In this document: positions 6,798 to 34,162 of the stretch, in pieces
Layout: each line of letters begins with the position of its first letter
Position numbering within the stretch: the first letter of the stretch is position 1
NCBI RefSeq assembly: GCF_006345805.1
Contig: NC_043017.1
Location: 23,994,001 to 24,058,000, forward strand
Length of the DNA: 64,000 nucleotides
Direction of reading: 5' to 3'
From: Octopus sinensis
Taxonomy: Eukaryota
Translations under genes and position numbers: made by a program
The notes under the pieces: generated by a model
The model's input: the letters and a program-made list of their open reading frames with translations, nothing else
Told to the model about the DNA's origin: nothing
The model's database searches: none

Positions 6798-6801
6798 CTT
6801 T

Positions 6802-6973: not shown

Positions 6974-7005
<32 letters not shown>

Positions 7006-11450: not shown

Positions 11451-11799
11451 CGAGAAGAAGAGAGGCAAGTGAATTGGGAGTGATTGGGTGGAGTCGCATG
11501 AGGACAACCAGTTCGAAGGAATCGAGGCCATTGTGACAATGATAGCAAAAGATGAGAGCGAAGACAATGCGCCTACAGGACACGTGCTGATCCCTATTAG
11601 TCAGTGACTTCATATTAATTAAAGAGGGTTTATTTTTCTTTCTGGATGCGGTCAAGGTTCCAAAGAAGCACCAGCCCCACACAGCTGTGAGACTAGCAGC
11701 TGCATAATCTTATCTATGACAATAATAGAAATGAAAATCTAGGACTAAGATGCAAGAGCTGCAAGTTTCTCATTATGTATGTATGTATGTATGTATGTG

Positions 11800-12661: not shown

Positions 12662-12862
12662 CAGTGCTTTTCAAACGTTTTGCTGGAGTGGAACCCCAAG
12701 GAAACATTCCACTGGCTCGAGGAACCCCTGTGCAATAATTTAATAGTCTTATGCACACATATCTGCACAGGAGAATTAAAAATTACTGCCGATTTTAGCA
12801 GTTTTGTAACTTCTTGCGGAACCCCTGGACTGTACTGGCGGAACCCTGGTTGAAAACCACTG
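12662..12862. mobile_element. hAT (Charlie-like) MITE
   Basis: TIR CAGTGCTTTTCAA / TTGAAAACCACTG. Perfect 8-bp TSD TTATATAG at 12654-12661 and 12863-12870, fitting the nTnTAnAn target pattern. Confidence 0.9.
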
Positions 12863-13065
12863 TTATATAGCCTAGTGCACCTATGATAATATGTACAAAT
12901 GAAAATCTATAACTTAGATCCAACAGTTTCAAATTTCTCATGTATGTAGTGCGCATACAGTGAAAGCCGCTTATTGTGGTCGCTTTTGGACAAAGCTCTT
13001 TCGATAACAATAATCAGCAGATAATAAGCGATTGAAACATTATTCGTAATTATAATGAAATAAGC

Positions 13066-13108
<43 letters not shown>

Positions 13109-13250
13109 TATATATGTCGTATGTATGTTTACTCTCGTGGAAGTTGCGCTGTGATGTAAAGCAAGATAGTTCATTAGTGACTCAGTCTACCCAACTAGTG
13201 CTAGAATTATACGTATCTATCTGCGTGTTTTACCAGTTTATAGCTGCAAC

Positions 13251-13251
<1 letters not shown>

Positions 13252-13328
<77 letters not shown>

Positions 13329-13349
13329 GACAGAGAGACAGACAGACTG
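13252..13349. repeat. Compound microsatellite (TG)n(AG)n(ACAG)n
   Basis: Read directly from the sequence. Confidence 0.95.
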
Positions 13350-15649: not shown

Positions 15650-16310
15650 ACAGTTAAGTAGATGAGGAAGCATTGCAAGTGTCCGAACTATCCATTAATC
15701 GATCATATCCACCCAGCCAACTCACTGCAAAAATTATGTTTCAGAGAGCGTTCTTCGTCCATTCTGTCAATGCGATCAGGCCAGTTACAGTCGAGCCCCG
15801 TACAGCAGAGTGTGTGCATATGACATCGAAGTTCTTGGTCTTTGGGAACTTGTTTTTCAGCATCAATCCAAAGATATAAGATAACCTTGCTATTGAGAGA
15901 TCTACCAAGTACAACCTCACCAGGAAAGATATCATAACAAATGAGTAAAAGTGGGAGCCATGCACTAGTATAGCTAGAGTATGTGCCACCCGGGGCGGCC
16001 CTTCCGTTTGCCGCCCCCTGACCCCACAAAAAACATATATTGCCTACAACAGGTTGAAAAATACCACCCCTTTAAAAGTGCCGCCTCTACCGCCCGCCCC
16101 ACCCCCTAGCTACGCTAATGGAGTCATGGAAGTCCAAAGCTGTCAGCGCACTGGCGTAGAGTTCCGACTGTCCAATGTTTTGTGTCTCTATTTGACTTGT
16201 CAGCCACTCCCAGAAATACTGGATGTCTTAGAACTGTTGAGTGATATCATTGTCATCAAACTATGGATGGACGAACAGGACAGGATAGGAAATGAAGGGA
16301 CATTTTAAGG
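15650..16310 (-). pseudogene. RTE-type LINE RT C-terminal remnant, interrupted by a MITE
   Basis: Minus-strand LWIDAEKQVP..CNWPDRIDRMDEERSLKHNFCSELAG resembles RTE W.GH..RM.D.R.PK..FY.EL. Upstream ELYASALTALDF resembles VY.A.VL..LLYG. Confidence 0.6.
15963..16120. mobile_element. hAT MITE nested in the RTE remnant
   Basis: TIR CACTAGTATAGCTAG / CTAGCTACGCTAATG (12/15). 8-bp TSD GAGCCATG / GAGTCATG. Confidence 0.75.
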
Positions 16311-18218
16311 TTGCGATCGCCGTTGATAACGTACATTCGACCAGCCGTCTGACAGCTCATTGACTCGGATAGCTGTAAACTTCAACAGATAGAAAAAAAT
16401 AAACATTTAAAATTTTATTGAATTCCATTTTTCGTATTATTACGAGAGTTTAACTGACTCTACATAAATTGCTTAATCTCTTCGCATGAGTTAAACAATA
16501 GATATGCTTACATACAGATTAGCAGCTTGATTTCCAAATATCTCTATCTCTCTGTTTCAAATATGCAAAACACCAAACTTAAAATTTCCCCTAATTTCCA
16601 CATTTTTCATCAAAATTTAAACTGGAAATATTTCAAAATGCCCTTTTCATAAAGTGTGTGTTGTAGCAGAACAAATTGTTAGTATTTTGGTATTCAAGCT
16701 GAACGTGAATGATTCTTATTTCGTTAGTAATATTGAGACGTACATCTACCAAAATAAATTAGCTCTCCACAGTCCAGATCATCTGTCTGAGGTAAGTTTT
16801 CAAGAAGTGATATAAGAAGCAGATGAAGCATTGTATACTTGATGAAAGTGTGGCTATTTTTTTTCTTCTTTTTCAGTAATGACTTATAAAAATTACTAGA
16901 ATATAACATAGAGAAGGAGGGGTTCTGAGTAAGAAATATTTGACGAAAATTTAATATTTAATAATGAACCAACAAGCCAATGAGCATTTTCCTGTTTTGT
17001 ATTCACACACACACATACATATTTATTTTTGCCTAGATTTCATATTTGACTGAACCAAGGAAACAAAAGCAAATGATTGTTATGACTTTGTCAATGATAT
17101 CAGCAACGTAAGTAAAATAAAATTATTTCAAATCGGACTTCTCTCATGACTAAGTGAATATATTTCCAACTTCTTTCAAATGTTCCGCATTTACTTGATG
17201 CGATTTATTTCAGGTCCATTCTTTCCATTTGCTTAATTGACATAAACATAAATCGTAACACCGATTGTCTTTTGAATCGTTGTGCACTCGGTGACTAAAT
17301 GGTTCACTTGGTTGATGTAAGATTGTATTACTTAGGTGTGTGTGTGTGTGTGTGTGTGTGCATTCATGTTTCTTGATTAAATACTTTACGTGTAAAGATA
17401 TACTTTTATTGTCTATATCTTATAAGACTGCTTGTAACAGAATTTAATACTGTTAACAACTATGTGCCGTATAAGCATTTTTTTCTTTTAGCATGTAATA
17501 CTTATCTTTAATAAAACCCTGCTTACATATTATACTGTTGTGTCAATTGTATTGTTTTCTATAACATTGTGATTTATTCCATTATTGTATGAACTGAAAT
17601 CCTGTCATCTTTTGCCTTTTATCCTTCCAGGTGCAATAAAATAATTACTAGTCATCGATCTGATCAACAATCCACTTACCATCACCAACAAATGAGTTAC
17701 TTTGTGGGTATGTAAGAAAATTTTATATGCACTAAATAAGAGATCCATTTGGAGATGTCGCAGCATCTCAATGAAAGATAAATACAACAGTAACGTCTAA
17801 ATGTAATGACATATCAGGCGTGTTTGATAGGATTGTACTTGTTTTCATTGCAACTAATTTTACTGACCTATCTACCAGGTTGCTCGTTAAAGTGCTGCAA
17901 GTGAATTTGTGTTGCACACCCAACGTAAAACGTTGACTCAAGAACTAGGATGCCATAAAATTGAAAGCCACTTTAACATTTAACCTTTACTTCTTTAAAC
18001 TGCCAAAAGGGCGATGAATCGCTGAAGGGCATATTCTTCACTCTGCTGCTCTGTTAAGTATATACCTTCAACGGATATATATATTAGTCTGATATAGTCA
18101 CTACCTCTGAAATCGATTTCGAGATCAATAAAAAGAAAATCTACTAAATGACCAGAAATAACACCAACGGCTGGCTAAGCTGGTGTTTGCTTGCTAAGCT
18201 CGTTTATTATCATTATTA

Positions 18219-18257
<39 letters not shown>

Positions 18258-18688
18258 GCCTGAGGATCTAACTTTAAGCTCATGATATTCTGATACTTGC
18301 GGCAAACTCGACAGGGATGTTGGAGTCGACCATTGAGGTCGACTTGCCTTTCCATCACTGGGGTTAGAGGTTAATAAAATAATTATACTGTCAGTATATA
18401 ACATAGAGCGACTCAATTAGGAAGGGGAATAAAAAGCCTTTGTTAATTAGTAGTTGTTACAACTGGACATAATAACAAGGAAGTTTGAATTTAATGTAAC
18501 CATGATGCAATTCCAAAATAATAATTTGAAGAGACTAGAACTCGTCTGGAAATAACATCCAGTGCTACTCTCGAATAATTACTTAAATCAGCAAATATAT
18601 TTCTAAATGAGAGAGTGAGAGTTAGAGAAGAATAACAAAAGCACATTCAGTACAGTTTATTACAAACAATACAACTTTATGATGGAGT

Positions 18689-18860
18689 CAGGCCCGTCGC
18701 CTGACTTCGGTGCCCGGGGATGCTTCAAAATATTCTGGGTAGGTACTAATTTGCATTGTGGGAAGATTTTTGTAAACTGTATTTTCTAAATCTGAGGGTG
18801 CACCTTTGAATAGTGAGGGGGCAGTGCCGTCCTCTGTCCCCACCCCTGGCGTTGGGCATG
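18689..18860. mobile_element. hAT MITE
   Basis: TIR CAGGCCCGTCGCC / GGCGTTGGGCATG (10/13). Perfect 8-bp TSD GATGGAGT at 18681-18688 and 18861-18868. Confidence 0.85.
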
Positions 18861-19944
18861 GATGGAGTTTCGGATTAGGAAAACCATACCTCATAGGAAA
18901 TGAGAAAGTTACAGAATTCTAGTGGAGGTGGGGGGGGGGGGTATTGTAAAAGAATTGAAATTATGCAAAAAATTCAGAATCGTAATTTCCGTTGTTTGAA
19001 ACACAAAATTAATAAAATAAATAGATAAGTAAAACTAAGGAAAATATTTCCCAATATGTTTGGTGTACATAATCCGAATCACCGTTAAGTTTTTCCCTTA
19101 AGATTACAAACAAGCAAAATACGTTAGCTACAGCTTTACAATAGGAAACAGTCGCATCCACGACCATGGCAAGCTAATTTGCATTTTTAACAGGAAATGA
19201 CTTAAGAGGAATTATAATATGAATTTTATCAGTGAGCCTTGACAATGAATGAGGAATACTCAGAATGGGAACTACATGGATAATTTCTCCACAGTGTCAA
19301 TAGTATACAGAAAAATAAAATCAATGAACTTGAAAAACTTCACAGGAAAATTTTATAAGCTCATTATAGTCACGTTTTAATCTGTATCTTAAAGAGGTAC
19401 TTCATTAATTAATTTGTAATACATACATAATACTTGCAAAACTTGTAATACAAAGTTTTGTAATACCAAATTTTTCGATACATTGATCGAGCAATCAATC
19501 GGTGGATCGTGATAAATATAGCATATCAATGTCTAGCAAACGCAGAAGCAAAGTCCAAGTACTCGCAATGAAGTCAACCTAGTAATTCTAGAAATCAGAA
19601 GCCAAATATCTTAATGATCAATCCATCATTTATTCATACATCTGTCAAGTCTGCATTTTTTAAAAAAATATATAAGCAAATTAAAGTCTAATGCTTTCTT
19701 TTAAAGAAAAATTATAACCTAGAAACTGCACAAACCCTCCGAATATCAGCAGACGTGTTGCTGCCCTAATTTCTATATCTAAAATAACTTTATCTTCGTA
19801 AAAGTAGGGCTTTTCCATTAGCATTATCGTATAAAAGCTAATTCAGTTCATTTTTAAGATGAATTAATTCAAATTTATTTTACCATTTTAGCAGATCATG
19901 AATCATCTATTACCCAGAATCCAGTATTATTTTCCTAAATTAAT

Positions 19945-21960
19945 GTAAAATAATAATAATAATAATAATGAAATCAATGTGTATAGAATTATGTACAAAA
20001 GTCAGGAAAGTGAACAGTGTATGAGTCATGATATACGTGTGTGCATGCGTATGGAAGGTGGGGGAGGGAGCATCAAGTGTAGTGTTGACGAATTTCAGGA
20101 AGCATGGAGGCTTTAAAGGATGCAATGTCTCAGCAACTAACAACTGATTCAAGTAATTTGTTCCATGCTTCAGCAACTCTGAGTATGAAAAAATGTTTCC
20201 GAAAGTCATGGGAGTTGTGCTGTTTTCTGACTTTGTAGGCATGTCCACGTGTGTTAGACACATGGAGCTGAAAAAGGTGCTCATGGTGGTTGTTGACACG
20301 ATGGTTAATAATTTTGTGGGTCAGTTGCCAGACGTCGGAGCTTCAATGTATCTATGCCCAAGGAATCAAAATGTTCAGAGTATGATAGATGCCTCATGGA
20401 GGGCATTCGCTTGGTTACATGTCTCTGAACAGTTCCCGGGAAGTCAATGTCCTGTGCAAGATAGGGGTTCCAGACTGTTGATGCAAATTCCAAGTGTGGC
20501 TGTACCATAGTCATATACAGCCTTAAATAGATAACTGGAGAGTGGCTGACAAAGTTCTTTCTGAGTAATGCCAAGACACCCTCGGCCTTCTTGACAATTT
20601 TAGAGATGTGCTTTCTCCAGCGCAAATCGCTGCTGACAGTAATGCTCATATCATGTTCACAAAAATACTTCTTTAATATTAGTGTTAGTGTTGTGGAGAG
20701 AATATGTGGACGCTAGGTTTTTCCTTCCAAAATGCATTGTGATAAACTTGTCCACAGCCAGCCTAAGTTGCCAGTCTGTGATCCATTATTGTATTGTGTC
20801 CATGTCCGATTGCAGGAAAGATCTATAGTGTTCAGGATCTGTCCTTTTTTATCTCAAGATACAGCTTGATGTCATCTGCATATTTTAGCACTGTGGCAAT
20901 CTTTGAGTTGACATCTATGCCATTAATGTATGCAACAAACAAATGGGGACCAAGAACTGATCCCTGCGGTACACCAGATGACATCTCACAGGATGAAGAA
21001 TGCTGTCCTAGTACCATGACTACCTATTTTCGGCTGAGAATGAAGGACTCCAACCAGTTAAAAAGATCATCTTTCACACTCACTGCAGAGAGTTTTGCCA
21101 TAAGTCTTTTGTGTAGCACAGAATTAAAAGTTTTAGCAAAGTCAAGGTAAACAATATCCACCCATAAGCCGCCATCAGTGTCCCGGGTAATGTCTTCAAG
21201 AAACTCGACAAGTTGATCACAGCAGCTAGAGTTAGGGATAAATCCAAAGTGCGAAGGCCGGATAAGGTTGTGAGAATTCCAGAAATTTCGGCGTCTTCCT
21301 CTTACACAGGATTCCATCAGTTTGGCAATGCATCTAGTAAGACTGACTGGACGACAGTTAAGACAGAACTGAAAGAAAAATGAAGGCTGGTGCAGAAGAA
21401 CGTACCCACCACGTTTGAGAAGCAGGTACGTAACACCCTCAAAACCAGGAGAAGCATAGTTGCGCTTATTCTTAAGATGATGTCGCAGCATTGCAGGTGT
21501 AAATTTCATGGAATTTATGGAATTTGGTGTCAGAGGTGGTGGAGATGTACGTTTTAGTTTTCGACAGTGAAAATGCCTGCATAGCTTTCAGCAATGAGTT
21601 CTGCGCATTTTAGGGGATCATCAGTAATCTGGTTTGTGTGGGGATTGCGAAGAGAACCAACTGGAGAGTGAGGTTTCTGCTTTGAACGCACATATTTCTA
21701 GAACACCTCACTGTCAGGGTTGGTTGCTATGACTGCTCAAATTCAAGTACTGCCCTCTTTTGTCACCTTGCTTGAGATGGTTGAATGATTTATTGCACTT
21801 TTTCCTGTTTATATCTGATTTATGCAGTTTGTATTCCCGTTCAGCATTACGACGTTCTTTCCTGGCAAGTCTGACTGCTGCAGTCTCCCAAATTGCACTT
21901 TTGAGATGTCCATATTGAGTTCAGGATGTTCTGAATTATTATGTTCACATCTCCAGAGTC
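19945..21960 (-). pseudogene. 5'-truncated CR1-clade LINE (RT domain, 3' UTR and (ATT)n tail)
   Basis: NCRPVSLT, DIVYLDFAKTFNSVLH, SGVPQGSVLGPHLF, YADDIKLY, VQPHLEFASTVWNPY and NTRGHAYKV..FFILRVAEAWNKL. Coding ends near 20074. Frameshifts and stops are present. Confidence 0.92.
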
Positions 21961-22065
21961 GTAAAATTCCAGCACTAGCGCAATGAAATCATTTGCACTT
22001 TACGGCCAACAAAAACTTTTTGACAAGACTCGCTTTAATCAATATCATTTAATATTTTTTCCACC

Positions 22066-22281
22066 AACAAAGCGGCAGAATTGTTAACGCACCAGGTAAA
22101 ATGCTTGGCAGCATTTCGACCGTCTTTACGTTCTAAGTTTAAATTCCACCGAGGTCGACTTTGCTCTTCATCCTTTCGGTGTCGATAAAATAAGTACCAG
22201 TTGAGCACTAGGATCGATGTAATCGATTTACCTTGTCCCCCGAAATTGCTGGCCTTATGCCAAAACTTGAAACCAATATTT
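22066..22281 (+). mobile_element. SINE family A (tail type 2)
   Basis: Family A head and core; tail AAATTGCTGGCCTTATGCCAAAACTTGAAACCAATATT. Confidence 0.85.
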
Positions 22282-22555
22282 ATTCCATAATCCCACCCCA
22301 CAAAACAAAATTACTTTCAACACTTGATTGAATTTAAAATCTTTTTTCATCCTTTTTGTGCTTTCTATGCTTTACCCTGCTGCACGTTGTCAGACATTTC
22401 TGCACAGTATTTACCTTGACCGAACAAACAAATACACACATCCGAACATATATAACACACAAAACCACTTCATTGAGCCTAATATGCACAGTTTAAGAAT
22501 AACTGGACCTATGACATAGATGAACTCCGTTGGGGCTTTTGCTAATAATGATTTC

Positions 22556-22785
22556 TAATTCTGGTACAAGGCCAGCAATTTCGAGGAAGGGAGTAAGACG
22601 ATTACATTGACCCCAGTGTTCAAATGGTGGTTATTTCATCGACCCAACTGTTCAAATGGTGACCCCCAAAAAGATGAATGGCAAAGATGACCTCGGTGGA
22701 ATTTGAACTCAGAACGTAACGGCAGACGAAATGCCGCTAAGCATTTTGCCAGGCATGCTAACGTTTCTGCCAGCTAGTCGCCTTA
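22556..22785 (-). mobile_element. SINE family A (tail type 2), inverted relative to its neighbours
   Basis: Reverse-complement homology to family A, with a small internal duplication of GACCC..TGTTCAAATGGTG. Confidence 0.85.
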
Positions 22786-22908
22786 CCTCTTGCTAGTAGT
22801 AAAAGAGAATGAATGAACTGTATATTCTTTGGGAGATACAAATTCGCCACTTAAATGTATATTAAAGTATATCAACATAGAGATAATATTTTATCGATAT
22901 TTTATCGA

Positions 22909-23320
22909 AAGGCGGCGAGCTGGCAGAAAGGCTAGCACGCTGGGTGAAATGCTTATTGGTATTTCGTCTGCCGTTACGTTCTGAATTCAAATTCCGCCGA
23001 GGTTGACTTTGCCTTTCATCCTTTCGGGATCGGTTAAATAAGTACCAGTTACACACTGGAGTCGATATAATCAACTTAATTCGTTTGTCTGTCCTTGTTT
23101 GTCCTCTCTGTGTTTAGCCCCTTGTGGGTAGTAAAGAAATAGAAATAGGTATTTCTTCTGCCGTTACGTTCTGAGTTCAAATTCCGCCGAGGTCAACTTT
23201 GCCTTTTATCCTTTCGGAGTCGATCAAATAAGTACCAGTTATGCACTGGAGTCGATGTAATTGACTTAATCCCTTTGTCTGTCCCCTCTATGTTTAGCCC
23301 CTTGAGTGCAATAAAGACAA
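22909..23320 (+). mobile_element. Head-to-tail SINE family A dimer (full unit plus a unit lacking the A-box)
   Basis: The second unit starts at GGTATTTCTTCTGCCGTTACG (~23148). ATATTTTATCGA flanks the whole dimer at 22897-22908 and 23321-23332. Confidence 0.8.
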
Positions 23321-23336
23321 ATATTTTATCGATATT

Positions 23337-23516
23337 AAAGCAACGAGAAGGCAGAATCGTTTTAAGTTCTGAGTTCAAATTCCACCAAGGTCAACTTTGC
23401 CTTTCAACCTTTTGGGACCGATAAAATAAGTACCAGTTGAGCACTGGAGTCGATGTAATCGACATACGCCCTCACCTGAATCTGATGGCCTTGTACCAAA
23501 ATTTGAAACCAATATT
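23337..23516 (+). mobile_element. SINE family A (tail type 2, internally deleted)
   Basis: Partial head, B-box, core hairpins and tail type 2. Confidence 0.8.
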
Positions 23517-24556
23517 TTACCCATATTAGAGAAATAAACTGTAAAGTCGTTCCTTGGAAGTTTTTGATATGAAAAGAAGCAAAAATGTGGAAATGTTATA
23601 ATGGATATAGTTTCTTCTTATGATTATTCTGCAGATGGTGAATAGCAGATTGCCGAACAGTCACACCCGAGAATACTTAGTTACATCCCTTTAAGTTCTG
23701 AGTTTAAAATTCCACCTAGGAATTCTTTTGTGGTCAATAAAACAAATACTGGTCAATATCCTATCAGTCTAAAATGAGTGTCTCCAGTTTCTTAGTTAAA
23801 TAACACACTGTGGTGATTTGGATCGTAAGTTCTCAAGTTTATATATGATGAGAAATAAGTTATACAACGTCTCTTTTCTTGAAGGAGTATAGGCTCAGTT
23901 GGTTCATCATTTCAAGACCAAGGAAACACAGGAGAGGCACGTAACTATCTAAGAGTCCCTTCTAAATAATGAAAGTATTCTTTAAAAAAACTCGCACTCC
24001 CATGAATTTTGACTCGGAACATGAAAGCAGATTTATTCCTCCTCGCTAATTTTCTTTCGGAGGCCCTGAAAGACATTTGGGAGTCAGTTAAGTAAAATTG
24101 GCTACTACAATAATGAATCGAAACTGTGTCGGATTAATATCGATCAAAAATTTTTTAACTCAATAAAAAACGTTTTTTTTTTTAAAAAAGAGAGCAACAA
24201 AGAAAAGAAGGAAAAAATGGTGAACATCACTTCTATTGGAAAATTCACTAATGACGGAAGTGAAGGAATTGAAATCAGAACAGATGTGAAACTAAAACAC
24301 AAAGAATGCCTTTTTTTTTTTTTCATTAATCCATTAAATCCCAGGTTTATAGGAATAAAGGGAAAGTCGTAGAGTTCATGTTTTTTCCTTCAGTACATAA
24401 GATTAACAGCTTTTTTTTTCCTTTTTCAAGAAACAACAACGAATACAATAACTAGATAAGTTCTATTATTTACAAACATATGGATAAAAATCAATCAAAC
24501 CTAACACTGGCATTCATACATCTACACTTGCAATATAAGCTTACGAATTACATATA

Positions 24557-24693
<137 letters not shown>

Positions 24694-25104
24694 CATAATG
24701 TGAGTGTGTTTATGATTTATTGATTTATTTTAAAGAGATTGTTTTTGTTTTCTATCCTGTCTTTCTTCCACTGCTGTTTATTTATAAAATGTAATACAAT
24801 AAACTGATCAGGCGGTGAACGGGATCAACAGGGTGAGTAGAGAAGAGGATAATTGGGAAGATGAAAGAAAACTGCTTAAAATAGAGAGGACAGTGAAAAA
24901 ATACAAAAGGACACAGTGCAGAGGATTGGTTTGAAAAAAAAAAAAAAAGAAAAAACAGAAAATAAAAATTCAATCAGACACACGTAGACTATGTTTACAT
25001 GAGACGCATATATTTCAGATTCGTGAATTTATGAGAAAATGTAAAAGAGTTTGTGTAGGTTCATGCAAAATGTTTTGAGTAGAACTAGAAATGAATGTAC
25101 ATCT

Positions 25105-25168
25105 AATATATATATATGTATATGTGTGTGTACGTGCGCGCGCGTGTCAGCATATATAATACATATGC

Positions 25169-25206
<38 letters not shown>

Positions 25207-25217
25207 AATGTGTGTGT

Positions 25218-25277
<60 letters not shown>

Positions 25278-25288
25278 AATGTGTGTGT

Positions 25289-25341
<53 letters not shown>

Positions 25342-25480
25342 GTGTGTATATATATTATATATATGTGTGTATGTATATACATACATACATATATACATAC
25401 ATATATATATATATTCGGATATGTATACATATAAATTTATGTGTGTGCATGCATAACACTCATACGCACACGCACACAAA
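25105..25480. repeat. Compound TA/TG/CA microsatellite with a duplicated (GT)n-AATGTGTGTGTACACAC-(AT)n module
   Basis: Read directly from the sequence; it produces the poly-YI/CV ORFs in the track. Confidence 0.95.
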
Positions 25481-25629
25481 TTGATATTGCTGTCATGTTT
25501 CAAGCCCAGTAATTAAGCAAAATGAAAACAAATAGAAAAGATAAAAACATAAAACTTTGTATGCTTAAGATATTATTAAATAAATCCACCACGACCACCA
25601 CCAGGAGTTCATAATCAATTGTATATAGA

Positions 25630-26020
25630 GGTGGAAATGTAAGCATTTTTTTTTTGCCTCATCCATGTAAACCTAAATACCTTCCTAGTAGCAGACTTCG
25701 GCATAGATTGTTGCATTAGACTTCTTCTCAATGACATCCCACATCCAAAAGAGACACAGATCCATATCTGGCAGGCTAGAAGTCCAAACATCATTGAAGA
25801 CAAATAGTGAATGTTTCAAAGTTTCACCGTGAAATAATCCTCCTGCATGCAGATTGAATCTTGTACTGGTGCAGAGTGTTTGGTGGACATATTGCCATTT
25901 GGATCATAACGTTTAGAAATTCTTGGTGTCAGAATATTATCAGGGATGTCCAAATAGTCAGTTGTGCTGGTATCAAGTCCACTTCGACGATAGTAGACGG
26001 CATCATATGTCATTTGCTAT
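25630..26020 (-). pseudogene. Decayed Tc1/mariner-superfamily (maT/DD37D-like) transposase C-terminus
   Basis: MSTKHSAPVQ resembles FQQDSAPAH. DVWTSSLPDMDLCLFWMWDVIEKKSN resembles WPSSSPDLNPLDY..W..LE. Confidence 0.5.
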
Positions 26021-26051
26021 GAATTTAAAAATCATCACAAAGACAGGACTT

Positions 26052-26290
26052 TTAGTTAGTTAGTTAGTTAATTTGGCTCAAAAGCAAATAGCAAGGCCAT
26101 GTAGGGGGACATGGAGTTAAGTACAGGGTGGTGTTCATGTAAAGAGTTCAGGCCACTTGAGGTCTGGCAGCTTATTCCACGGATCCGCAACCCGGACGGA
26201 GAAAGCTCCTCTCCTTCGATTGAGATGAAATCGTCGCAGGTAGAGCTTTTCGGAATGACCCCTCAGCCGACGCTCTGGATAACAATTTAG
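26052..26290 (-). mobile_element. 3' end of a second CR1 family with a (TAAC)n tail
   Basis: RLRGHSEKLYLRRFHLNRRRGAFSVRVADPWNKLPD followed by a short UTR and (TAAC)4. Confidence 0.85.
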
Positions 26291-26584
26291 ATAACAATAG
26301 GGACTCAGGAAGGCTTAAAGGCTATCACCCAACAATTGTGACGTTAGGTAACTTGATTCACTACGAATTTCTTTTTCCTTTGGTCTGAAGAATTTTAACT
26401 TCCTTACCATGTACTTCAGGTAGTAAAAAGATCTAGAATAATCTATAAGAATATTTCGATTCATATAAATGAATGGTTTCACGCCGAAGTGATTTCCAAT
26501 GGACCTAACAGTCGTCTTTCTACTCAGACGACACTTTGTTTGTCATACGTATGTGTGTATACCTGCTTGTATATACTAACATAC

Positions 26585-26588
26585 AAAC

Positions 26589-26619
<31 letters not shown>

Positions 26620-26646
26620 GAGAGAGGTAGATAGATATGCATACGA

Positions 26647-26679
<33 letters not shown>

Positions 26680-27076
26680 TAAAAAACATATATATACATA
26701 CATATATGTATACATACATATACATACATGCATACATACATGTATATAGACATACATATATACATATATATATATATCTATACATATATATATATACATA
26801 TATATACATATATATCTATACATATATATATACATATATATCTATACATATATATACATATATATATATACATATATATATACATACATATATATACATA
26901 TATATATACATATATATCTATACGTATATCTATACATATATATCTATACATATATATATCTATACATATATATCTATACATATATATACATATACATATA
27001 TATCTATACATATATATACATACATATATATCTATACATATATATACATATACATATATATCTATACATATATATA

Positions 27077-27142
<66 letters not shown>

Positions 27143-27363
27143 ATATACATACATACACACACACACACACATACTACATACATACATACACATACATACA
27201 CACACCACACACACATACATACATACATACATATACATACATACACACACCACACACACACACATACATACATATACATATACACATACATATACATATA
27301 CTATATATATATACATACATATACATATACATATATATATATACATACATATACATATACATA

Positions 27364-27397
<34 letters not shown>

Positions 27398-27780
27398 CAT
27401 ATATATATATATATATACGTATATAGATATATATATATACATACACATACATATATAAATATACATACGTATATAGATATATATATATACATACACATAC
27501 ATATATATATAAATATACATACATATATATATATACATATACATACATACATACATATATATATACACCTATACATACATACATACATACATATATATAT
27601 ACACATATACATACATACATATATTATATATATATATACATACATACATATATATACATACTATATATACATACATACATATACATACATACATACATAT
27701 ACATACATACACACACACACACATACATACATACATACATATACATACATACACACACACACACACACATATACATATAC

Positions 27781-27818
<38 letters not shown>
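26585..27818. repeat. ~1.2-kb degenerate TA/TACA/TCTA compound microsatellite
   Basis: Read directly from the sequence. Confidence 0.95.
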
Positions 27819-27823
<5 letters not shown>

Positions 27824-28013
27824 TTAAATAAGAAAATTAAGAAACAGGATAAAAATTTACGTAGAGATGTTTTTACTTAAATACATTCAAGTTCATACAT
27901 AGAAATTCCTACCTACAGCTGTTTCCATACCCAATTCTTTAATTTCAGAAATAAATATGTATGTGTATATATACATACAAATACACACACACACACATAC
28001 ACACACACACACA

Positions 28014-29180
28014 CACACACGATAGAAGTAAATACACACCCCATAAAACATCATTCTAAGTTTATTCTCACACTTAAATGTTTATATTTTTTTATTAATT
28101 GACATTTTTATGTTCAGGTTCTATATGTAACTGTTTACATGCATTGTACAAAAGAAGCTTTGGGACTGCCTGAAAGAGGCCGTATTGTGGGTCATTGCGA
28201 AGGTGGACATAGTCAACGCATAATCGCAGAAAACTTTTCTACAGTTAATAGAGTAATTGTGCAATTCACCATAGAGGGAAAGGAGTCTGCATCACCTCAC
28301 CCAGATCAGCCTCTGGCAGACCCTTCTCTTTGTTAAGAGAAATGTGGAGGATAACCCTCTTTGCAAGGCCTCTGACATAACAGAACAAGTTGATGTCAGT
28401 CCCAGAATAGCTGTCACGTATCTCCACAAACTTTGTGACTATGGCAGAGCAGCAAGAAGGAAGCCACTTTTTCGACCAGTCAACATCAATCGGAGAAACG
28501 ATTGGGCCAGTGAGATGGTGAAGAAGCTACTAGCATTTTAGGAAACTCTTATATTCGCTGATGAGTCTAGATTTGCTGTATTTTTTGACAGTGGTCAAGT
28601 GTGTGTCTGGAGACTCTGTGATCAAGAATTTGATGTGAAAAGTTTGCAGCCAACAATGAAACACAGCAGCTATTCTGTGGTCTGGGTAGCAATGGTTCAT
28701 TAGACTTGGTGGAGTGTGGGGGAAACATAAACTCAGATAAATATGTGTCCATATTGCAGAAAGGACTCCTTCCAATCTTCTCCAGTGGTGAAATGATTTA
28801 AGCTAAAATGATCAAATATCTGTTGGATGAGAATGACATTAAAAGGCTTCCATGTCCAAGCTAGTCACCACATATGAACCCTATTGAACACCTCTGGGAC
28901 ATAATGGACAGGATGCTTCATAAAAAGAACAAGAAAGCATCTTCAAAGCCAAATCTTTTGAGATTACTGCATGAAACTAGGCAAGAAATTCCGCAAGAGA
29001 ATATTCGTCATCAGACCAGTAACATGCCCAATAGAGTCCTTGCATTGAAAAATACAAAGGGCACGTCTACTAAGTATCGAATATTTATATTATAACAATT
29101 AATAAATAAATTTAATGTATAATTTCAGATTTAAATAAATTTTAGTAATTATAATGGCGTCTATTTATTTCTGCCATGTG

Positions 29181-29182
<2 letters not shown>
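28014..29182 (+). mobile_element. Near full-length Tc1 (DD34E) element with a pseudogenised transposase (28139-29080)
   Basis: [26 protein letters not shown] and SPHMNPIEHLWD. Degenerate 27-bp TIRs CACACACGATAGAAGTAAATACACACC / GGCGTCTATTTATTTCTGCCATGTGTG (21/27). Confidence 0.85.
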
Positions 29183-29211
<29 letters not shown>

Positions 29212-29249
29212 TGTGTGTGTAAACACACTTTTCCTTTTTTCTTTTACTT

Positions 29250-29495
29250 TTCCTAGTACTCATTCGATCGGTTCTTTGACCGAACCGCTAAGTTACGGGG
29301 ATGTAAACACACCAACATCGGTTGTCAAGCAATGGGGGTGGACAAATACATACACAGTTTCCATCTACCAAATCCACTCAAAAGGCCTTGGTCAGCTCGA
29401 GGCTATAGTAGAAGGCACCTGCCCAAGGTGCCACGTAGTTGGAGCGAACCCGGAACCATGTGGTTCGGGAGCAAGCTTCTTACCGCACGGGCCAA
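29250..29495 (-). mobile_element. SINE family B (partial)
   Basis: Reverse-complement homology to 9660-10062. Confidence 0.8.
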
Positions 29496-29805
29496 GTTAA
29501 ATATTATATTACACAGGAATTGTATTAGTGAGATTTACTTAATTGACCCACTGATCGGTTGAGAAAAATTAAACGACCTAGAAAATTAATACTTTCGCCA
29601 ATCCTTTCTGGTTATAAACCAAGCAGAACACTGAAGGTAGGGAAGGACATACAGATTGAAACCGGATATATTTTGTAAAGGTCACTCAATGGAATAAGCA
29701 TGGAGCAGTCTTTGAACATACTTTCGTACGTTTTACACCTTTACTTTTTAACTATAAATTTTGATTTGTATAGATTCTTAACCGCTTTTCAACTGCATGC
29801 ATACA

Positions 29806-30251
29806 ATCGCAGGAGTGGCTGTGTGGTAAGTAGCTTGCTTACCAGCCACATGGTTCCGGGTTCAGTCCCACTGCGTGGAATCATGGGCAAGTGTCTTCTG
29901 CTATAGCCCCGGGCCGACCAATGCCTTGTGAGTGGATTTGGTAGACGGAAACTGAAAGAGACCTGTCGTATATGTGTGTATGTATATATGTTTGTGTGTC
30001 TGTGTTTGTCCCCCTAGCATTGCTTGACAACCGATGCTGGTGTGTTTACGTCCCCGTCACTTAGCGGTTCGGCAAAAGAGACCGATAGAATAAGTACTGG
30101 GCTTACAAAGAATAGTCCCTGGGTCGATTTTCTCGACTAAAGGCGGTGCTCCAGCATGGCCGCAGTCAAATGACTGAAACAAGTAAAGAGTATACATACA
30201 TACATACATACATACATACATACATACATACATACATACATACATACATAC
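29806..30251 (+). mobile_element. SINE family B, near full length, followed by (TACA)n
   Basis: Only scattered differences from the copy at 9660. Confidence 0.9.
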
Positions 30252-30779
30252 ATGATGCCTGTTTTAATGCCAGGAACTTTATAGTTTATACTGGGTGCGT
30301 TTTTCGTGGCACCAGCACCAGTGAGGTAACTTTGGATCTTGCAAGACTTAAAGGGGCTACCACGACATAAAGAGGAATAAAAGTTAGTGTATGGTGTTTA
30401 TAAGAGATATGCCAACATCAGCTAAATATGATTACAATAACAGATTTATAGCTGTGATAGTGAATTAGTAGAGATTAACAGTATACAATAGGGATAGGAA
30501 GTAAGTAACGGATAAAAAAGGAAGGAGGGATTAATGTCAAATGTTAGTGAGAAAGGAAGTGACAGAGTGGTAAAGGTGAATGAGATGGGCTGCGTAGGGG
30601 CATATCTGTAGAGATGTCGTATATTATACATTTCAAAGTTCACGGTCTACTCCGAATTTCACACTTGGCTGGGCTGTTCCCTTTACCCAACGCATTCAGT
30701 TTTATACCAGATAATGATTGCACTATATAAAATATATTATTGATATCAACAACTGTTGAATTATATATATATATAGTTA

Positions 30780-30978
30780 ATCCAAACATGAAAACACAAC
30801 AACGCGAGGACGTGGAACAAGTATAGTATTATTGGACGCTCAGGAAAAAGGAAAGAAGGAGGGTTTAACGTTTCGAGCGGAGCTCTTCGTCAGAAACATA
30901 GGAAAAGGAAAGATCCAAAGAAGGGAAGACGGAGGTTAAAAAAATCGCCAACGGTACACACGCAGTTACATTTTGAAT
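30780..30978 (-). mobile_element. Penelope-like pseudo-LTR / terminal fragment inserted in (TA)n
   Basis: Contains the PLE-typical CTGACGAAGAGC..GCTCGAAACGTT motif and is flanked by TA runs. Confidence 0.65.
30863..30897 (-). ncRNA. Minimal type I hammerhead ribozyme motif
   Basis: Minus strand GUUU-CUGACGA-A-GAGC-UCC-GCUC-GAAACGUU-AAAC: 4-bp stem I, intact core, 4-bp stem II, and a palindromic AACGUU in place of stem III. Confidence 0.7.
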
Positions 30979-32139
30979 ATATATATCATACATATATATC
31001 ATATATACATCATAGCATCATATACATGTATGTATGTATGTATGTATGTATAAGACTGGTTGTTCGGTTCCTGTAGATAATTCTGTCCATTTATATTTGT
31101 GCAGTTTAGAAACTTATTTTCAAATTTCTCAATGTTTCGTACAAACCGAAAGGAAGGAAGGAAGGACAGACAGACAGACAGACAGATTTGTGTGCGAATA
31201 CATTTAAGAATAAATTATCATATGGATGTTTCCACAGACTAGTTAAACAAGTATTTCTCTCCGAATTCAAGGAACGTACAATTTCTTTCTGAAAAATGCG
31301 ATTTTACCAATCATTATTTGTATTTTACTTTTCATTCGTCATTATTTAACAAAGTTCGCAAGCTCATGTCCCAACTTCGAAAGTGAAAAGCAAAATGAGC
31401 CAGTTTAGCGAAGGGCCCTGTCCATTTGAATTCAACATTCGTCAACATGACTGTCCCACCCAACACTATTTTTCATATCGCCGAATTGTAGATAAAATTG
31501 GATTTAGATGCTGCCTCTTTAGAAATAATGGACTAAATCACTAAAAAGCAAGCTTATTTGCTTTGGACATCAAACAGCAATGGTGACAAAACGCAACTAA
31601 TAACTCTTCAGCCGGTACTTCGACATTAAAAAAAAAATCAATTCTTTGATTTAAGCTTTATGTTGTTAATCCTTTCAAGAGAAAATAACAGCAACAGTTT
31701 TTTTCTTAATAACTGGTTTAGCAATGGTTTTAAAATGATGGATTAAAGGGTTAAATAAAGTAGCACTTCCATAGAATCAAGCAGCATAAAAAATTATTAC
31801 TGGCATGGTGTACTAAATTATATAAGAGAACTGTAGAGGAATTTTGGAAGAGATAAGTGACACTCGGAATGTTTCTGTAATTTGGTTTAAAAAATGTAAC
31901 TTTCACTACGAATTCTAATAAGTGTTGTTAATAGGAGGATGACGAAGGGGCATTATTGTCACGAATGTGAATTAAAGGAATCCAAAAAGCCATCATTTCA
32001 AATAATGCGAATATCTGATGGGTGCAATAAAGACACAGGATGCGTGTTAGACATCATCCAGTTTTCATTCTACAGTCAGGTGCATATAATAAATTTCATA
32101 TTACGTATTATACATACAATACACTTTTACACACACACA

Positions 32140-32318
<179 letters not shown>

Positions 32319-33082
32319 GGTGCGTAGTTAGTATGCATTTATCTGAATTGATGTTGTTATCGAGTGCGGCCAACCGAAGTGTCGGTAATTTATCTCCAGT
32401 CTACTTATACCCTATCCAAATTCATTACTAAAGAAGGATTAACTTAGACTCCTTCATGATCCGACTACATAGAGGGGTGACCCGAAGTTCAAACCGAGAA
32501 AATAATCGCAACGAATTGGTAGGGTAACTTAGATCGTGGGAGAGAATATTTTGCAGTGATGATTCTGTCTTTCTGAGATCAAATTCCCATTGAGATCAAC
32601 TTAAACTTTAATCCATTCGAGTCAGCAAGTAAAATACCAATACTAGATCAATTCTCTCTCTCTCTCATTTGTAATTCAAAGGTCCAGTTTTGTCACTCAG
32701 TATCACAGTGATTCGGCTTGAGTTTCATGAAAGATACACGTGTCTAGGATAGAAAACGCGTTTGTATTTTTGACGTGAAAGTTAACTTCCAAACACACCA
32801 CAAGGAGGAGAGTTTTGCTAGAAAATGTGACAAATGACAACAAAATAGAGGCCTATATTTTTCCTTCCCCTTCCTTAAAGGGTGACAAACTTCACATTTA
32901 GTTTAGAAGGAAGATGCGTTTTTCCATTACACGGATATTAATAACTTACACTGCAATCTGAGTTTGTGCTAAGAAAATCTACAGAAGATTCGAAGCAATA
33001 TGATATATGTATATCATTAAAATATTTAGATGGAAGTAATATAAAGGATTCGATACCTTTATGTAGTTAATTATTTCAAGGG

Positions 33083-33250
33083 AAGGAGTAAGTCGATTAC
33101 ATCGACACCAGTGCTCCACTGGTACTTATTTTATCGGCCCCGAAAGGCAAAATGACCTCGGCAGAATTTGAACGCAGAATGCAAAGAAAGGCAAAATGAC
33201 CGCTAAGCATTTTGCCCGACGTGCAAATGATTCTGCCAGCTCGCCGCTTT
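33083..33250 (-). mobile_element. SINE family A (partial)
   Basis: Reverse complement of the head and core. Confidence 0.8.
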
Positions 33251-33274
33251 ATGCGTGTCACTAATGTGAATCAT

Positions 33275-33427
33275 GTATTCAAATTCCGCCAAGGTTTACT
33301 TTGTCTTCCATCCTTTCGAGGGCGATAAAATAAGTACCAGTCGATCACGGAGGGTCGATGTAATCGACTTCTCCCTAACCACTCCCCCGAACTTGCTGGC
33401 CTAGTGCCAAAATTTGAAACCAATATT
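33275..33427 (+). mobile_element. SINE family A (5'-truncated, tail type 2)
   Basis: B-box, core and tail; it sits head-to-head with 33083-33250. Confidence 0.8.
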
Positions 33428-33867
33428 AATCAGGTATCATAATAAAGTGTAAGATGATTTTTGAACTCAATCATAATTTTTTTTTTTTATTATCATCGCG
33501 CAGTGTATAAGTCCCAGGTGGGCCGCAGATTACAATAAATATGCTCCGATAGAGCACATGCTATAATGCTCCCATGATTTTCATCGCACGTACATACATA
33601 TTGATCAGACAATTATACAGTGTCAAACACACACACACACACACACACATCTAACAATTACTTCATGTGCGCATACATATATTTATTTCATATATATGTC
33701 CTTATATGTAAATATATACTCATACACTAACTTGCATGCATGAGTATTGAAACTCGATACACAGTAAACACACTCGTAAAAAAGAAAAAAAAAAAAACAA
33801 CAATACTTTTCTCTCCCGTCACCAAAAACACACTGACTGTAACAACAAAATTCCCCTTTGTACTCAC

Positions 33868-33943
33868 CGGATCCTTCAACTCGGTTTATTATAGTATCCA
33901 GAAACCTATTACCGGCTGTCCTTCTGCCTCTTCGGACAGGCAT
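33868..33943 (-). CDS. erg: First coding exon of an ether-a-go-go-related (erg / KCNH2/6/7-type) voltage-gated potassium channel, encoding the PAS-cap
   Basis: Encodes MPVRRGRRTAGNRFLDTIINRVEGS plus 1 nt, 15/25 identical to the hERG N-terminus [25 protein letters not shown]. The ATG has A at -3. The exon ends at a consensus donor G|GTGAGT after 76 coding nt (phase 1), the length and phase I recall for KCNH2 exon 1. Confidence 0.9.
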
Positions 33944-34162
33944 TGTTGCAGTTAAATTCCAATTTTTCTTTTATCCTAACTTTTAATTAGTCGAAGTAAA
34001 AGTTCAGTAAAAATCCAAAGGTCTCATTATTTTTTTTAATCGTCATAATTGTTAGAGTTTGTTTTATTTTTTTCGCTTCCTTTTCATCGGATTTAAATTT
34101 TAATTTTTAATAATTTTCTATAAACGAGAAAGAAAAACAATAAAAGGAGGCGGGGAGAATAT

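What the first reader, a model, noticed from the sequence alone, without database searches (positions are those of the whole stretch)
33868..33943. erg K+ channel exon 1 with a rewired, poly-basic PAS-cap (RRGRRTAGNR in place of [10 protein letters not shown])
Seen: the exon keeps MPVRRG, N12, FLDTII and EG, the 76-nt length and the phase-1 donor, but residues 7-11 and 13 read R-R-T-A-G and R. Established: the (H/L)VAPQNTF segment is highly conserved across EAG/ERG/ELK channels, and the hERG N-tail controls slow deactivation through contact with the cyclic-nucleotide-binding homology domain and gating machinery. Inference: three extra arginines and loss of the AP-Q turn could mark a cephalopod erg paralogue with altered gating. 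The A-rich codons (AGA, AGG, AAT) are also possible A-to-I recoding sites.
Basis: partly seen in the sequence, partly recalled or inferred. Interest (0 to 1): 0.72.

Follow-up and report, generated by a model that had tools for sequence, protein, structure and literature searches.

The report
Octopod Elk channel exon, unusual N-tail
This is a real, conserved first coding exon of a voltage-gated potassium channel gene in an octopus-like genome, but it belongs to the Elk (Kv12) branch, not erg, and its tip has replaced a motif that is otherwise almost invariant in animals with a more positively charged one.

Summary
On the minus strand, 33943→33868 reads ATG…MPVRRGRRTAGNRFLDTIINRVEGS+G, which is 76 nt, followed by a G|GTGAGT phase-1 donor. 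An exhaustive search found one true relative, an Argonauta hians protein that starts MPVRKGRTVAGNRFLDTIINRVEGSG and continues into a PAS domain. The two exons show dN/dS ≈0.10. Residues 10–25 are identical despite 6 silent changes, and the flanks do not align. In Argonauta, exon 2 lies 58 kb downstream, so its absence from the window is expected.

The "erg" label is not supported. The attached PAS core scores Elk 123, Eag 91 and Erg 82 bits, groups with Elk in 93/100 bootstraps, carries the Elk-only N-linker motif, and matches the fly ELK PAS structure best. The 76-nt phase-1 exon also occurs in canonical Elk genes.

The tail is genuinely unusual. Of 52 KCNH caps, 50 keep APQN(T/I), and the octopod cap is one of the two exceptions. 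Its net charge is +5 (Argonauta +4), against +1 to +3 elsewhere. Basic residue 5 and the helix hydrophobic face are retained.

Any gating consequence, such as stronger PIP2 or S4–S5-linker coupling, is inference. RNA editing was not tested.

The parts
33868..33943 (-). Coding part of exon 1 (76 nt): start codon plus 25 codons plus the first base of Gly26. It encodes the PAS-cap MPVRRGRRTAGNRFLDTIINRVEGS(G).
   Evidence: It is 83% identical (63/76 nt) to Argonauta exon 1 (L001 10001-10076), with 9 synonymous and 3 non-synonymous codon differences and dN/dS 0.10.
33941..33943 (-). Start codon ATG, in context aacaATGc.
   Evidence: The ATG is conserved in Argonauta, and it is the first in-frame ATG after the upstream stop.
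33905..33925 (-). Codons 7-13, R-R-T-A-G-N-R. This is the divergent, basic segment of the disordered N-tail that replaces the canonical LLAPQNT / HVAPQNT.
   Evidence: 50/52 KCNH caps have APQN(T/I) here. Argonauta has R-T-V-A-G-N-R. In the AF2 model residues 1-12 are coil with pLDDT about 50.
33869..33904 (-). Codons 14-25, FLDTIINRVEGS. This is the amphipathic cap helix, with the hydrophobic face F14, L15, I18, I19, V22 retained.
   Evidence: Identical in Argonauta despite 4 silent changes within codons 14-25 (L15, T17, N20, S25). Helix 13-25 is predicted in the Argonauta model. The hERG hydrophobic patch F14/L15/I18/I19/F22 is described in bioRxiv 10.1101/2023.03.04.531007.
33862..33867 (-). 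5' splice donor GTGAGT (phase 1, after CCG).
   Evidence: Argonauta has G|GTAAGT at the same position. Canonical Elk loci L002-L004 have C|GTGAGG or C|GTAAGT after exactly 76 nt.
33971..33973 (-). In-frame stop TAA, 10 codons upstream of the ATG, which bounds the reading frame.
1..33861 (-). Part of intron 1 (at least 33.9 kb). It holds no PAS exon or any other KCNH exon, and it is full of dispersed repeats and transposon relics.
   Evidence: tblastn with hERG and with the Argonauta protein finds no further exon in the window. Argonauta intron 1 is about 58.3 kb (exon 2 starts at L001 68335).

Best explanation
Window 33943-33868 (minus strand) is the first coding exon of an Elk-subfamily (Kv12, KCNH3/4/8-like) voltage-gated K+ channel gene of an octopod-like cephalopod. 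It encodes the PAS-cap, which has a disordered N-tail (residues 1-12) and an amphipathic helix (13-25). The exon is spliced, across an intron longer than the rest of the window, to exons encoding an Elk-type PAS domain, an Elk-type N-linker and the channel core.

Shown:
- The exon is real and under purifying selection.
- Its Argonauta counterpart is joined in phase to an Elk-type PAS domain.
- The helix hydrophobic face (F14, L15, I18, I19, V22) is kept.
- The basic residue at position 5 is kept (R5 in the window, K5 in Argonauta).
- The PAS arginine aligned with hERG R56 is kept.
- The otherwise near-invariant L-L-A-P-Q-N-T tail is replaced by R-(R/T)-(T/V)-A-G-N-R, raising the N-tail net charge to +4/+5.

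Inferred: as in other KCNH channels, the eag domain docks on the neighbouring subunit's CNBHD and the N-tail reaches up to the S4-S5 linker, C-linker and inner leaflet. There the extra arginines would strengthen electrostatic contact with PIP2 or acidic gating-machinery residues. That would change open-state stabilisation, i.e. mode shift (voltage-dependent potentiation) and deactivation speed.
For: Exon identity and selection:
- Sequence, frame, ATG and donor.
- Only true homologue of the cap among 1.84 billion proteins: Argonauta hians GAB1606936.1, cap at residue 1, 82% identical.
- dN/dS 0.10 with dS 0.74; residues 10-25 are identical with 6 silent changes; the 100-nt flanks are 32-34% identical, which is chance level.
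- The exon is the only unique collinear match between the two loci by blastn and tblastx.

Splicing in Argonauta:
- 76-nt exon 1, then a polypyrimidine-CAG acceptor at L001 68335, in phase, continuing into a PAS domain (Pfam PAS_9, 7.9e-15).
- The next gene model on the same strand is 845 aa with Ion_trans and cNMP_binding.
- Neither locus has an alternative canonical cap exon.

Elk assignment:
- PDB sequence search of the PAS core: fly ELK 123.1 bits, hERG 86.9, ERG3 79.7, EAG1 76.2, EAG2 68.6.
- Subfamily HMMs: 122.6, 91.0 and 81.9 bits for Elk, Eag and Erg.
- Bootstraps: 93/100 with Elk.
- The N-linker KRKRRGREVLFNLS matches the motif RRRSRAVLYxLS, found only in Elk fragments.
- Foldseek top hit 4hp4, fly ELK PAS: TM 0.93, 52% identity.

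Cap anatomy:
- Helix 13-25 and a low-confidence coil at 1-12 in the AF2 model.
- 50/52 caps have APQN(T/I); charge is an outlier.

Mechanistic background:
- The PAS-cap regulates voltage-dependent potentiation and intrinsic-ligand dynamics in ELK, and points toward S4, the S4-S5 linker and the C-linker (PMC7515569).
- Elk1 cap residue K5 is a 'universally conserved' basic residue needed for PIP2-dependent mode shift, together with R347 and R479 (PMC4621751).
Against: - The Elk assignment rests on the Argonauta orthologue, because the window holds only the cap exon. On its own the cap is nominally closer to the Erg cap (62.5% identity) than to the Elk cap (48%).
- Orthology of the two exons is inferred from unique best match only. 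No flanking synteny could be shown.
- The Argonauta PAS domain sits on a long branch at the base of the Elk clade in 72/100 bootstraps, and it scores 122.6 bits against the Elk HMM where typical Elks score 160-172 (those were training members). It could therefore be a fast-evolving paralogue or a separate lineage.
- The Erg reference set was small: 4 vertebrate sequences plus 2 Erg-like ones.
- No RNA evidence for the splice was examined; the Argonauta model is a split gene prediction.
- Residues 5, 8 and 9 differ between the two species, so part of the tail may simply be drifting.
- No functional data exist. The PIP2/electrostatic idea is inference.
Confidence: 0.8

Rival explanations
1. One reading: exon 1 of an erg (Kv11, KCNH2/6/7-like) paralogue with a rewired PAS-cap.
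For: MPVRRG and FLDTII match the Erg cap best (62.5% identity vs 48% for Elk caps). The 76-nt phase-1 exon equals my recollection of hERG exon 1, which was not checked with a tool.
Against: The PAS domain spliced to this cap in Argonauta is Elk-type by four tests, and it carries the Elk-only N-linker motif. Erg+P0002 is a clade in only 3/100 bootstraps. The 76-nt phase-1 exon is also found in canonical Elk genes. Elk caps also start MPV/MPA-x-(K/R)-G.
Confidence: 0.06
2. Same gene identity, but the divergent tail is degenerate rather than rewired. The canonical APQNT contact was lost in this lineage, residues 7-13 are under relaxed constraint, and the extra arginines have no specific gating role.
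For: All three amino-acid differences between the two octopod exons fall in the tail, at residues 5, 8 and 9. The tail is predicted disordered with low confidence. The whole PAS domain sits on a long branch. A firefly Erg fragment also shows a variant cap, HVAPRTT, so the motif can change.
Against: A10-G11-N12-R13 and R7 are identical in both species although synonymous sites are about half saturated (dS 0.74). Basic residue 5 is kept as R/K. 50/52 caps across Metazoa keep APQN, which argues that this position is normally functional.
Confidence: 0.35
3. The gene is neither Elk nor Erg proper. It is a separate, possibly cephalopod- or mollusc-specific KCNH lineage, or an old Elk duplicate that coexists with a canonical Elk gene.
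For: P0002 is basal to all Elk fragments in 72/100 bootstraps and lies on a long branch. Its identity to Elk PAS cores averages only 46.7%. Both the cap and several near-invariant PAS positions deviate.
Against: The Elk-specific N-linker motif is present. Elk+P0002 is a clade in 93/100 bootstraps. Basal placement is the usual behaviour of a fast-evolving member. No second Elk-like cap or PAS was seen in the loci examined, although whole genomes could not be searched.
Confidence: 0.12
4. A chance ORF, pseudo-exon or annotation artefact that is never expressed.
For: No transcript data were examined. The Argonauta gene model is a split prediction with a read-through tail. The surrounding window is repeat-rich.
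Against: The ATG, frame, length and donor are conserved between two species whose flanks are unalignable. dN/dS is 0.10. The Argonauta junction to exon 2 is in phase with a good acceptor. The match to KCNH caps is highly significant.
Confidence: 0.02

Closest known systems
Elk (Kv12; KCNH3/KCNH4/KCNH8; Drosophila Elk) channels, PAS-cap and eag domain
   Same: - Start MPV-R-(R/K)-G with a basic residue at position 5.
- Cap helix FLDTI..R..G.
- 76-nt phase-1 first coding exon.
- In the Argonauta orthologue: an Elk-type PAS core (54% identity to fly Elk), the Elk N-linker motif, the conserved PAS arginine that forms the CNBHD salt bridge (invariant R55; PMC7515569), and an adjacent Ion_trans + cNMP_binding core.
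   Different: - Residues 7-13 are R(R/T)(T/V)AGNR instead of LLAPQNT.
- N-tail net charge is +4/+5 instead of +1/+2.
- The helix reads IINRVEGS instead of IATRFDGTH, one residue shorter before the PAS domain.
- The PAS core is unusually divergent: long branch, 122.6 vs 160-172 bits against the Elk HMM.
hERG (Kv11.1, KCNH2) PAS-cap
   Same: MPVRRG is identical. The hydrophobic patch F14, L15, I18, I19 is identical and position 22 is hydrophobic (V for F). The architecture of a disordered tail at 1-12 plus a helix at 13-25 is the same. From my own knowledge, not checked with a tool, the 76-nt coding exon 1 is also the same.
   Different: HVAPQNT is replaced. The attached PAS domain is not Erg-type: 33-36% identity, 82-87 bits. 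Membership in Erg is not supported.
Eag (Kv10, KCNH1/5) PAS-cap
   Same: The general cap-plus-PAS architecture, and NFVLGNA at the start of the PAS core.
   Different: Eag caps read (R/K)[14 protein letters not shown](I/V)RR and are one residue longer. The PAS core scores only 69-76 bits against solved Eag structures and 91 bits against the Eag HMM, and Eag+P0002 is a clade in 0/100 bootstraps.

Membership tests
KCNH (EAG superfamily) eag domain | N-terminal PAS-cap: a basic residue at position 4/5 and an amphipathic helix with hydrophobic positions 14, 15, 18, 19 and 22 | tested here: met
   The window has R4, R5, F14, L15, I18, I19, V22. Helix 13-25 is predicted for the Argonauta orthologue. 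The reference patch is taken and the position-5 residue.
KCNH (EAG superfamily) eag domain | Near-invariant A-P-Q-N-T segment just before the cap helix | tested here: not met
   50 of 52 caps have APQN(T/I). The window has T-A-G-N-R and Argonauta V-A-G-N-R; only N12 is kept.
KCNH (EAG superfamily) eag domain | Cap encoded by a 76-nt first coding exon ending in phase 1 | tested here: met
   Window, Argonauta, and three canonical Elk loci L002-L004.
KCNH (EAG superfamily) eag domain | Cap spliced to a PAS domain, followed by a six-TM core and a CNBHD | tested here: inconclusive
   The window holds no exon 2. In Argonauta the gene model joins the cap in phase to a PAS domain, and the next model has Ion_trans + cNMP_binding. 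No transcript evidence was examined.
Elk subfamily (Kv12) | PAS core closest to Elk orthologues | tested here: met
   For the Argonauta orthologue: 123 vs 87/80/76/69 bits; HMM scores 122.6/91.0/81.9; bootstrap 93/100; Foldseek top hit fly ELK.
Elk subfamily (Kv12) | N-linker motif RRRSRAVLYx(L/I)S after the PAS domain | tested here: met
   Argonauta has KRKRRGREVLFNLS. Among the 120 fragments the motif was found only in Elk-class ones.
Elk subfamily (Kv12) | Canonical Elk cap (K/R)[21 protein letters not shown] | tested here: not met
   48-52% identity to Elk caps; residues 7-13 and 19-26 differ.
Elk subfamily (Kv12) | Elk-type S1-S6/CNBHD core and Elk gating (hyperpolarised activation, voltage-dependent potentiation) | not testable with these tools
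Erg subfamily (Kv11) | Erg cap [25 protein letters not shown] | tested here: inconclusive
   This is the best cap-level match (62.5% identity), but HVAPQNT is absent, and MPV-x-(K/R)-G also occurs in Elk caps.
Erg subfamily (Kv11) | Erg-type PAS core (KFIIANA…, …CFLC…, …VIMFILNF) | tested here: not met
   The Argonauta orthologue has NFVLGNA…, PFWC and VVLFLVSF. Identity to Erg is 30-36%, the Erg HMM gives 81.9 bits, and Erg+P0002 is a clade in 3/100 bootstraps.

The most novel reading that the evidence does not exclude
Octopod cephalopods carry an Elk-type channel whose PAS-cap N-tail has exchanged the almost universally conserved LLAPQNT segment for a conserved, strongly basic R-x-x-A-G-N-R tail. 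This exchange retunes PIP2- and S4-S5-linker-dependent open-state stabilisation (mode shift) of a subthreshold K+ current in the cephalopod nervous system. It would be a natural experiment showing which part of the KCNH N-tail is dispensable and what extra charge does. A further possibility is that codon 5 (AAA in Argonauta, AGA here) is a K-to-R A-to-I recoding site that is hard-wired as G in this species.
Probability: 0.2. Interest if true: 0.55.

Novelty: new variant of a known kind. Interest (0 to 1): 0.38.

Why it matters
The PAS-cap tail is the part of KCNH channels that reaches the gating machinery, and in this sample its APQNT core is conserved from cnidarian-like sequences to humans. 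This lineage has replaced the core while keeping the rest of the cap under purifying selection. That offers a natural variant for testing what the tail does in Elk channels, where the only cap residue studied so far is K5 in PIP2-dependent mode shift. On the practical side, the result corrects the gene label from erg to Elk, shows that the cap sequence and exon length cannot assign the subfamily, and flags a split gene model in the Argonauta annotation.

Tried and rejected
- Plus-strand reading of the coordinates gives a frame with a stop; the exon is on the minus strand.
There are none.
- The word-index homology search with the X-padded 25-aa cap found no candidates. This is uninformative, because the Argonauta protein is in that database and shares 12 five-residue words with the cap. 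The attempts were rejected for parameter reasons.
- The homology search with the 205-aa Argonauta protein returned only itself. The later profile search listed only proteins of up to about 240 aa. Full-length cephalopod or mollusc KCNH proteins, and the 845-aa Argonauta core, could therefore not be retrieved.
- Exact-product look-ups to identify the window's species failed (the read-through ORF, an RT fragment and a DDE fragment). The species is undetermined.
- There is no alternative canonical cap exon in the window or in Argonauta intron 1.
- Collinear conserved elements around the exon by blastn and tblastx: only repeats and transposons.
- RNA folding of the exon with 100 nt on each side, as a hint of an editing substrate: z = +0.76, nothing special.
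- Literature search for the peptide string and for octopus KCNH channels found nothing relevant.
- No tRNA genes in the window.

Full report
**1. Observation**

The plus-strand translation of 33868-33943 contains a stop. The reverse strand reads ATG CCT GTC CGA AGA GGC AGA AGG ACA GCC GGT AAT AGG TTT CTG GAT ACT ATA ATA AAC CGA GTT GAA GGA TCC G, which is MPVRRGRRTAGNRFLDTIINRVEGS plus one base. It is followed by GTGAGTAC. An in-frame TAA lies ten codons upstream, with no intervening in-frame ATG.

The resemblance to KCNH PAS-caps is not chance. The Erg cap hits this spot, and nothing else, in the six-frame window at E 2.7e-6. An exhaustive HMMER scan of 1.84 billion proteins with the window's first 30 residues returned three hits. 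Two are repeat proteins matched internally. The third, P0002, matches at its own residue 1 with 82% identity.

**2. The relative and its gene**

P0002 is GAB1606936.1, a 'hypothetical protein' of the octopod Argonauta hians. It starts MPVRKGRTVAGNRFLDTIINRVEGSG and continues into a PAS domain (Pfam PAS_9, E 7.9e-15).

Its genomic locus, L001, shows the following:

- Exon 1 is exactly 76 nt (10001-10076), with donor G|GTAAGT.
- Exon 2 starts at 68335, behind …tttattttccag, in phase.
- Two further exons follow.
- About 5 kb downstream on the same strand there is a separate 845-aa gene model with Ion_trans and cNMP_binding domains.

The annotation has evidently split one channel gene. The last 16 residues of P0002 begin at GATAAG|GTTGGT and look like intron read-through.

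Intron 1 is about 58 kb in Argonauta, while the window offers only 33.9 kb downstream of the exon. That explains why no PAS exon is found in the window.

**3. Is the exon functional?**

Between the window and Argonauta, the exon with a few flanking bases (window 33861-33947) is the only unique collinear match. Everything else shared is SINE-like repeats or transposon families.

Within the exon, 63/76 bases are identical, whereas the 100-nt flanks are 32-34% identical, which is chance level. Nine codons differ synonymously and three non-synonymously (R5K, R8T, T9V). This gives dS 0.74, dN 0.075 and dN/dS 0.10. Residues 10-25 (AGNRFLDTIINRVEGS) are identical despite six silent changes. The ATG, the length, the frame and the donor are all conserved.

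This is the signature of a coding exon under purifying selection. It also shows that A-G-N-R is a conserved feature of this lineage and not an error in one genome.

**4. Which subfamily?**

The cap alone is indeed nominally closest to the Erg cap (62.5% identity vs 48% for Elk caps). The rest of the protein says otherwise.

- *Solved structures.* The Argonauta PAS core scores 123.1 bits against fly ELK (4hp4), 86.9 against hERG, 79.7 against ERG3, 76.2 against EAG1 and 68.6 against EAG2.
- *Subfamily HMMs.* A profile search yielded 120 KCNH N-terminal fragments from many animals. HMMs built from them without P0002 score it at Elk 122.6, Eag 91.0 and Erg 81.9 bits. Mean identity is 46.7% to Elk, 37.7% to Eag and 33.0% to Erg.
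- *Bootstraps.* In 100 neighbour-joining replicates, Elk+P0002 is a clade 93 times, Erg+P0002 3 times and Eag+P0002 never.
- *N-linker.* The sequence KRKRRGREVLFNLS matches RRRSRAVLYx(L/I)S, a motif found only in Elk-class fragments: KCNH8, KCNH3-like, centipede and mite.
- *Structure.* An AlphaFold model (PAS core pLDDT about 96) matches the fly ELK PAS crystal structure best (TM 0.93, 52% identity), with hERG and EAG at 34-39% identity.
- *Exon structure.* The 76-nt phase-1 exon is not an Erg trait. Three loci with canonical Elk caps (L002-L004) encode the cap in exactly 76 nt, followed by C|GTGAGG or C|GTAAGT.

Caveats apply to this assignment:

- P0002 sits on a long branch, basal to the other Elks in 72/100 replicates.
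- The Erg reference set is small.
- The channel core could not be retrieved.
- The assignment is transferred to the window through exon-level orthology only.

**5. How unusual is the cap?**

Among the fragments, 52 retain a cap. Of these, 50 have APQN(T/I) immediately before the helix. This holds across Elk, Erg and Eag, and across vertebrates, insects, mites, nematodes and three flatworms (Macrostomum and Hymenolepis Elk, Heterobilharzia Eag). The exceptions are the Argonauta protein and a firefly Erg fragment with APRTT. So the octopod tail is not a general spiralian feature. No other mollusc cap was available for comparison.

Net charge of the residues before F14 is +5 in the window, +4 in Argonauta and +1 to +3 in the other 51 caps.

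Several elements are retained:

- Basic residue 5 (R here, K in Argonauta).
- The helix hydrophobic face F14, L15, I18, I19, V22.
- In Argonauta, the PAS arginine that is invariant across the alignment (R55). It aligns with hERG R56, one of the PAS residues reported to form the CNBHD salt bridge (PMC7515569).

The model predicts a helix at residues 13-25 and a low-confidence coil at 1-12. This is the same layout described for hERG.

**6. Likely mechanism**

Established background from the papers read:

- In KCNH channels the PAS-cap's extended N-terminus points toward S4, the S4-S5 linker and the C-linker.
- It controls deactivation in hERG, and voltage-dependent potentiation and intrinsic-ligand dynamics in ELK (PMC7515569).
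- In human Elk1 the cap residue K5, described as universally conserved and basic, is required for PIP2-dependent mode shift, together with R347 (S4-S5 linker) and R479 (post-S6) (PMC4621751).
- In hERG the cap helix's hydrophobic patch anchors the cap between the PAS domain and the CNBHD (bioRxiv 10.1101/2023.03.04.531007).

Inference for this exon: the docking elements are intact, so the cap is probably positioned as usual. The segment that changed is the flexible stretch between the tip and the helix, and it now carries two to three extra arginines close to the inner leaflet and the gating machinery. The most likely consequence is altered electrostatic coupling to PIP2 or to acidic residues, and hence altered open-state stabilisation.

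The main rival is that this stretch has lost its canonical contact and is partly drifting, since residues 8 and 9 differ between the two species. Nothing here distinguishes the two readings, so I give the specific mechanism about 0.3.

**7. RNA editing**

This could not be tested. Folding the exon with 100 nt on each side gives no unusual stability (z +0.76). That neither supports nor excludes editing. The only suggestive detail is codon 5: AAA (K) in Argonauta and AGA (R) here.

**8. Novelty and verdict**

I found no paper on cephalopod KCNH channels in the library. The gene itself is an ordinary family member and probably already exists as a gene prediction. The new observation is a lineage-conserved replacement of the APQNT tail in an Elk-type channel.

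The finding is real. The label should change from erg to Elk. The functional claims remain hypotheses. The species of the window is undetermined: the sequence shares repeat families with Argonauta but has unalignable unique DNA and an exon dS of about 0.74, consistent with another octopod-like cephalopod (inference).

Noticed in passing
window 35812-36216 (-), 52085-52471 (-), 21024-21509 (-): Transposon relics: a mariner-like Transposase_1 fragment (E 4.9e-5, just below Pfam's cut-off), a DDE_1 pogo/Tigger-like fragment (E 1.7e-11) and a reverse-transcriptase fragment (E 1.6e-9).
   Followed up: partly
window 7009-7097, 9711-9825, 29355-29435, 29857-29970: A short SINE-like dispersed repeat, present in several copies in the window and in many copies in the Argonauta locus (about 76-89% identity over these intervals). 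This is the main reason to think the window comes from a related cephalopod.
   Followed up: partly
window 36989-37411; L001 42382-42804 and 62148-62570: A shared transposon-like coding family, about 50% amino-acid identity over 141 residues by tblastx. It is not collinear with the channel gene.
   Followed up: no
window 34162-34240, 33626-33650, 33775-33800: Microsatellites close to the exon: a long (GA)n run followed by (GACA)n about 220-300 nt upstream of the ATG, (CA)n in intron 1, and a poly-A/T run about 70 nt into the intron. The transcription start site and the extent of the 5'UTR were not determined.
   Followed up: no
window 25000-27650: A very AT-rich low-complexity block (GC 0.25, strong GC skew) made of TA/CA-type simple repeats. 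It produces long spurious ORFs on both strands.
   Followed up: no
window 62289-62859, 37843-38335, 61326-61528, 36908-36982: Tandem arrays: a 200-nt unit x2.9 (94% matches), a 234-nt unit x2.1 (98%), a 101-nt unit x2.0, and (CT)37.
   Followed up: no
L001 10001-75420 and 80699-85420 (Argonauta hians BAAFZT010000054.1): The Argonauta annotation splits the channel gene into two models. One is a 205-aa N-terminal model (GAB1606936.1) whose last 16 residues look like read-through of the donor GATAAG|GTTGGT. The other is an 845-aa model with Ion_trans and cNMP_binding domains.
   Followed up: partly
P0118 (Photinus pyralis fragment), P0017/P0065 (unnamed JGI fragments): Other cap variants in the panel. 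A firefly Erg-like fragment reads [19 protein letters not shown], losing QNT and FLDT. Two unnamed Elk-like fragments read MPIRRGR(G)FAPQNT, with an extra arginine at position 7 like the octopod cap.
   Followed up: no
L002, L003, L004: Canonical Elk-cap loci, one NCBI assembly and two metagenome contigs, in which gene callers read straight through a short intron 1. They show that the 76-nt phase-1 cap exon is shared by Elk genes.
   Followed up: yes
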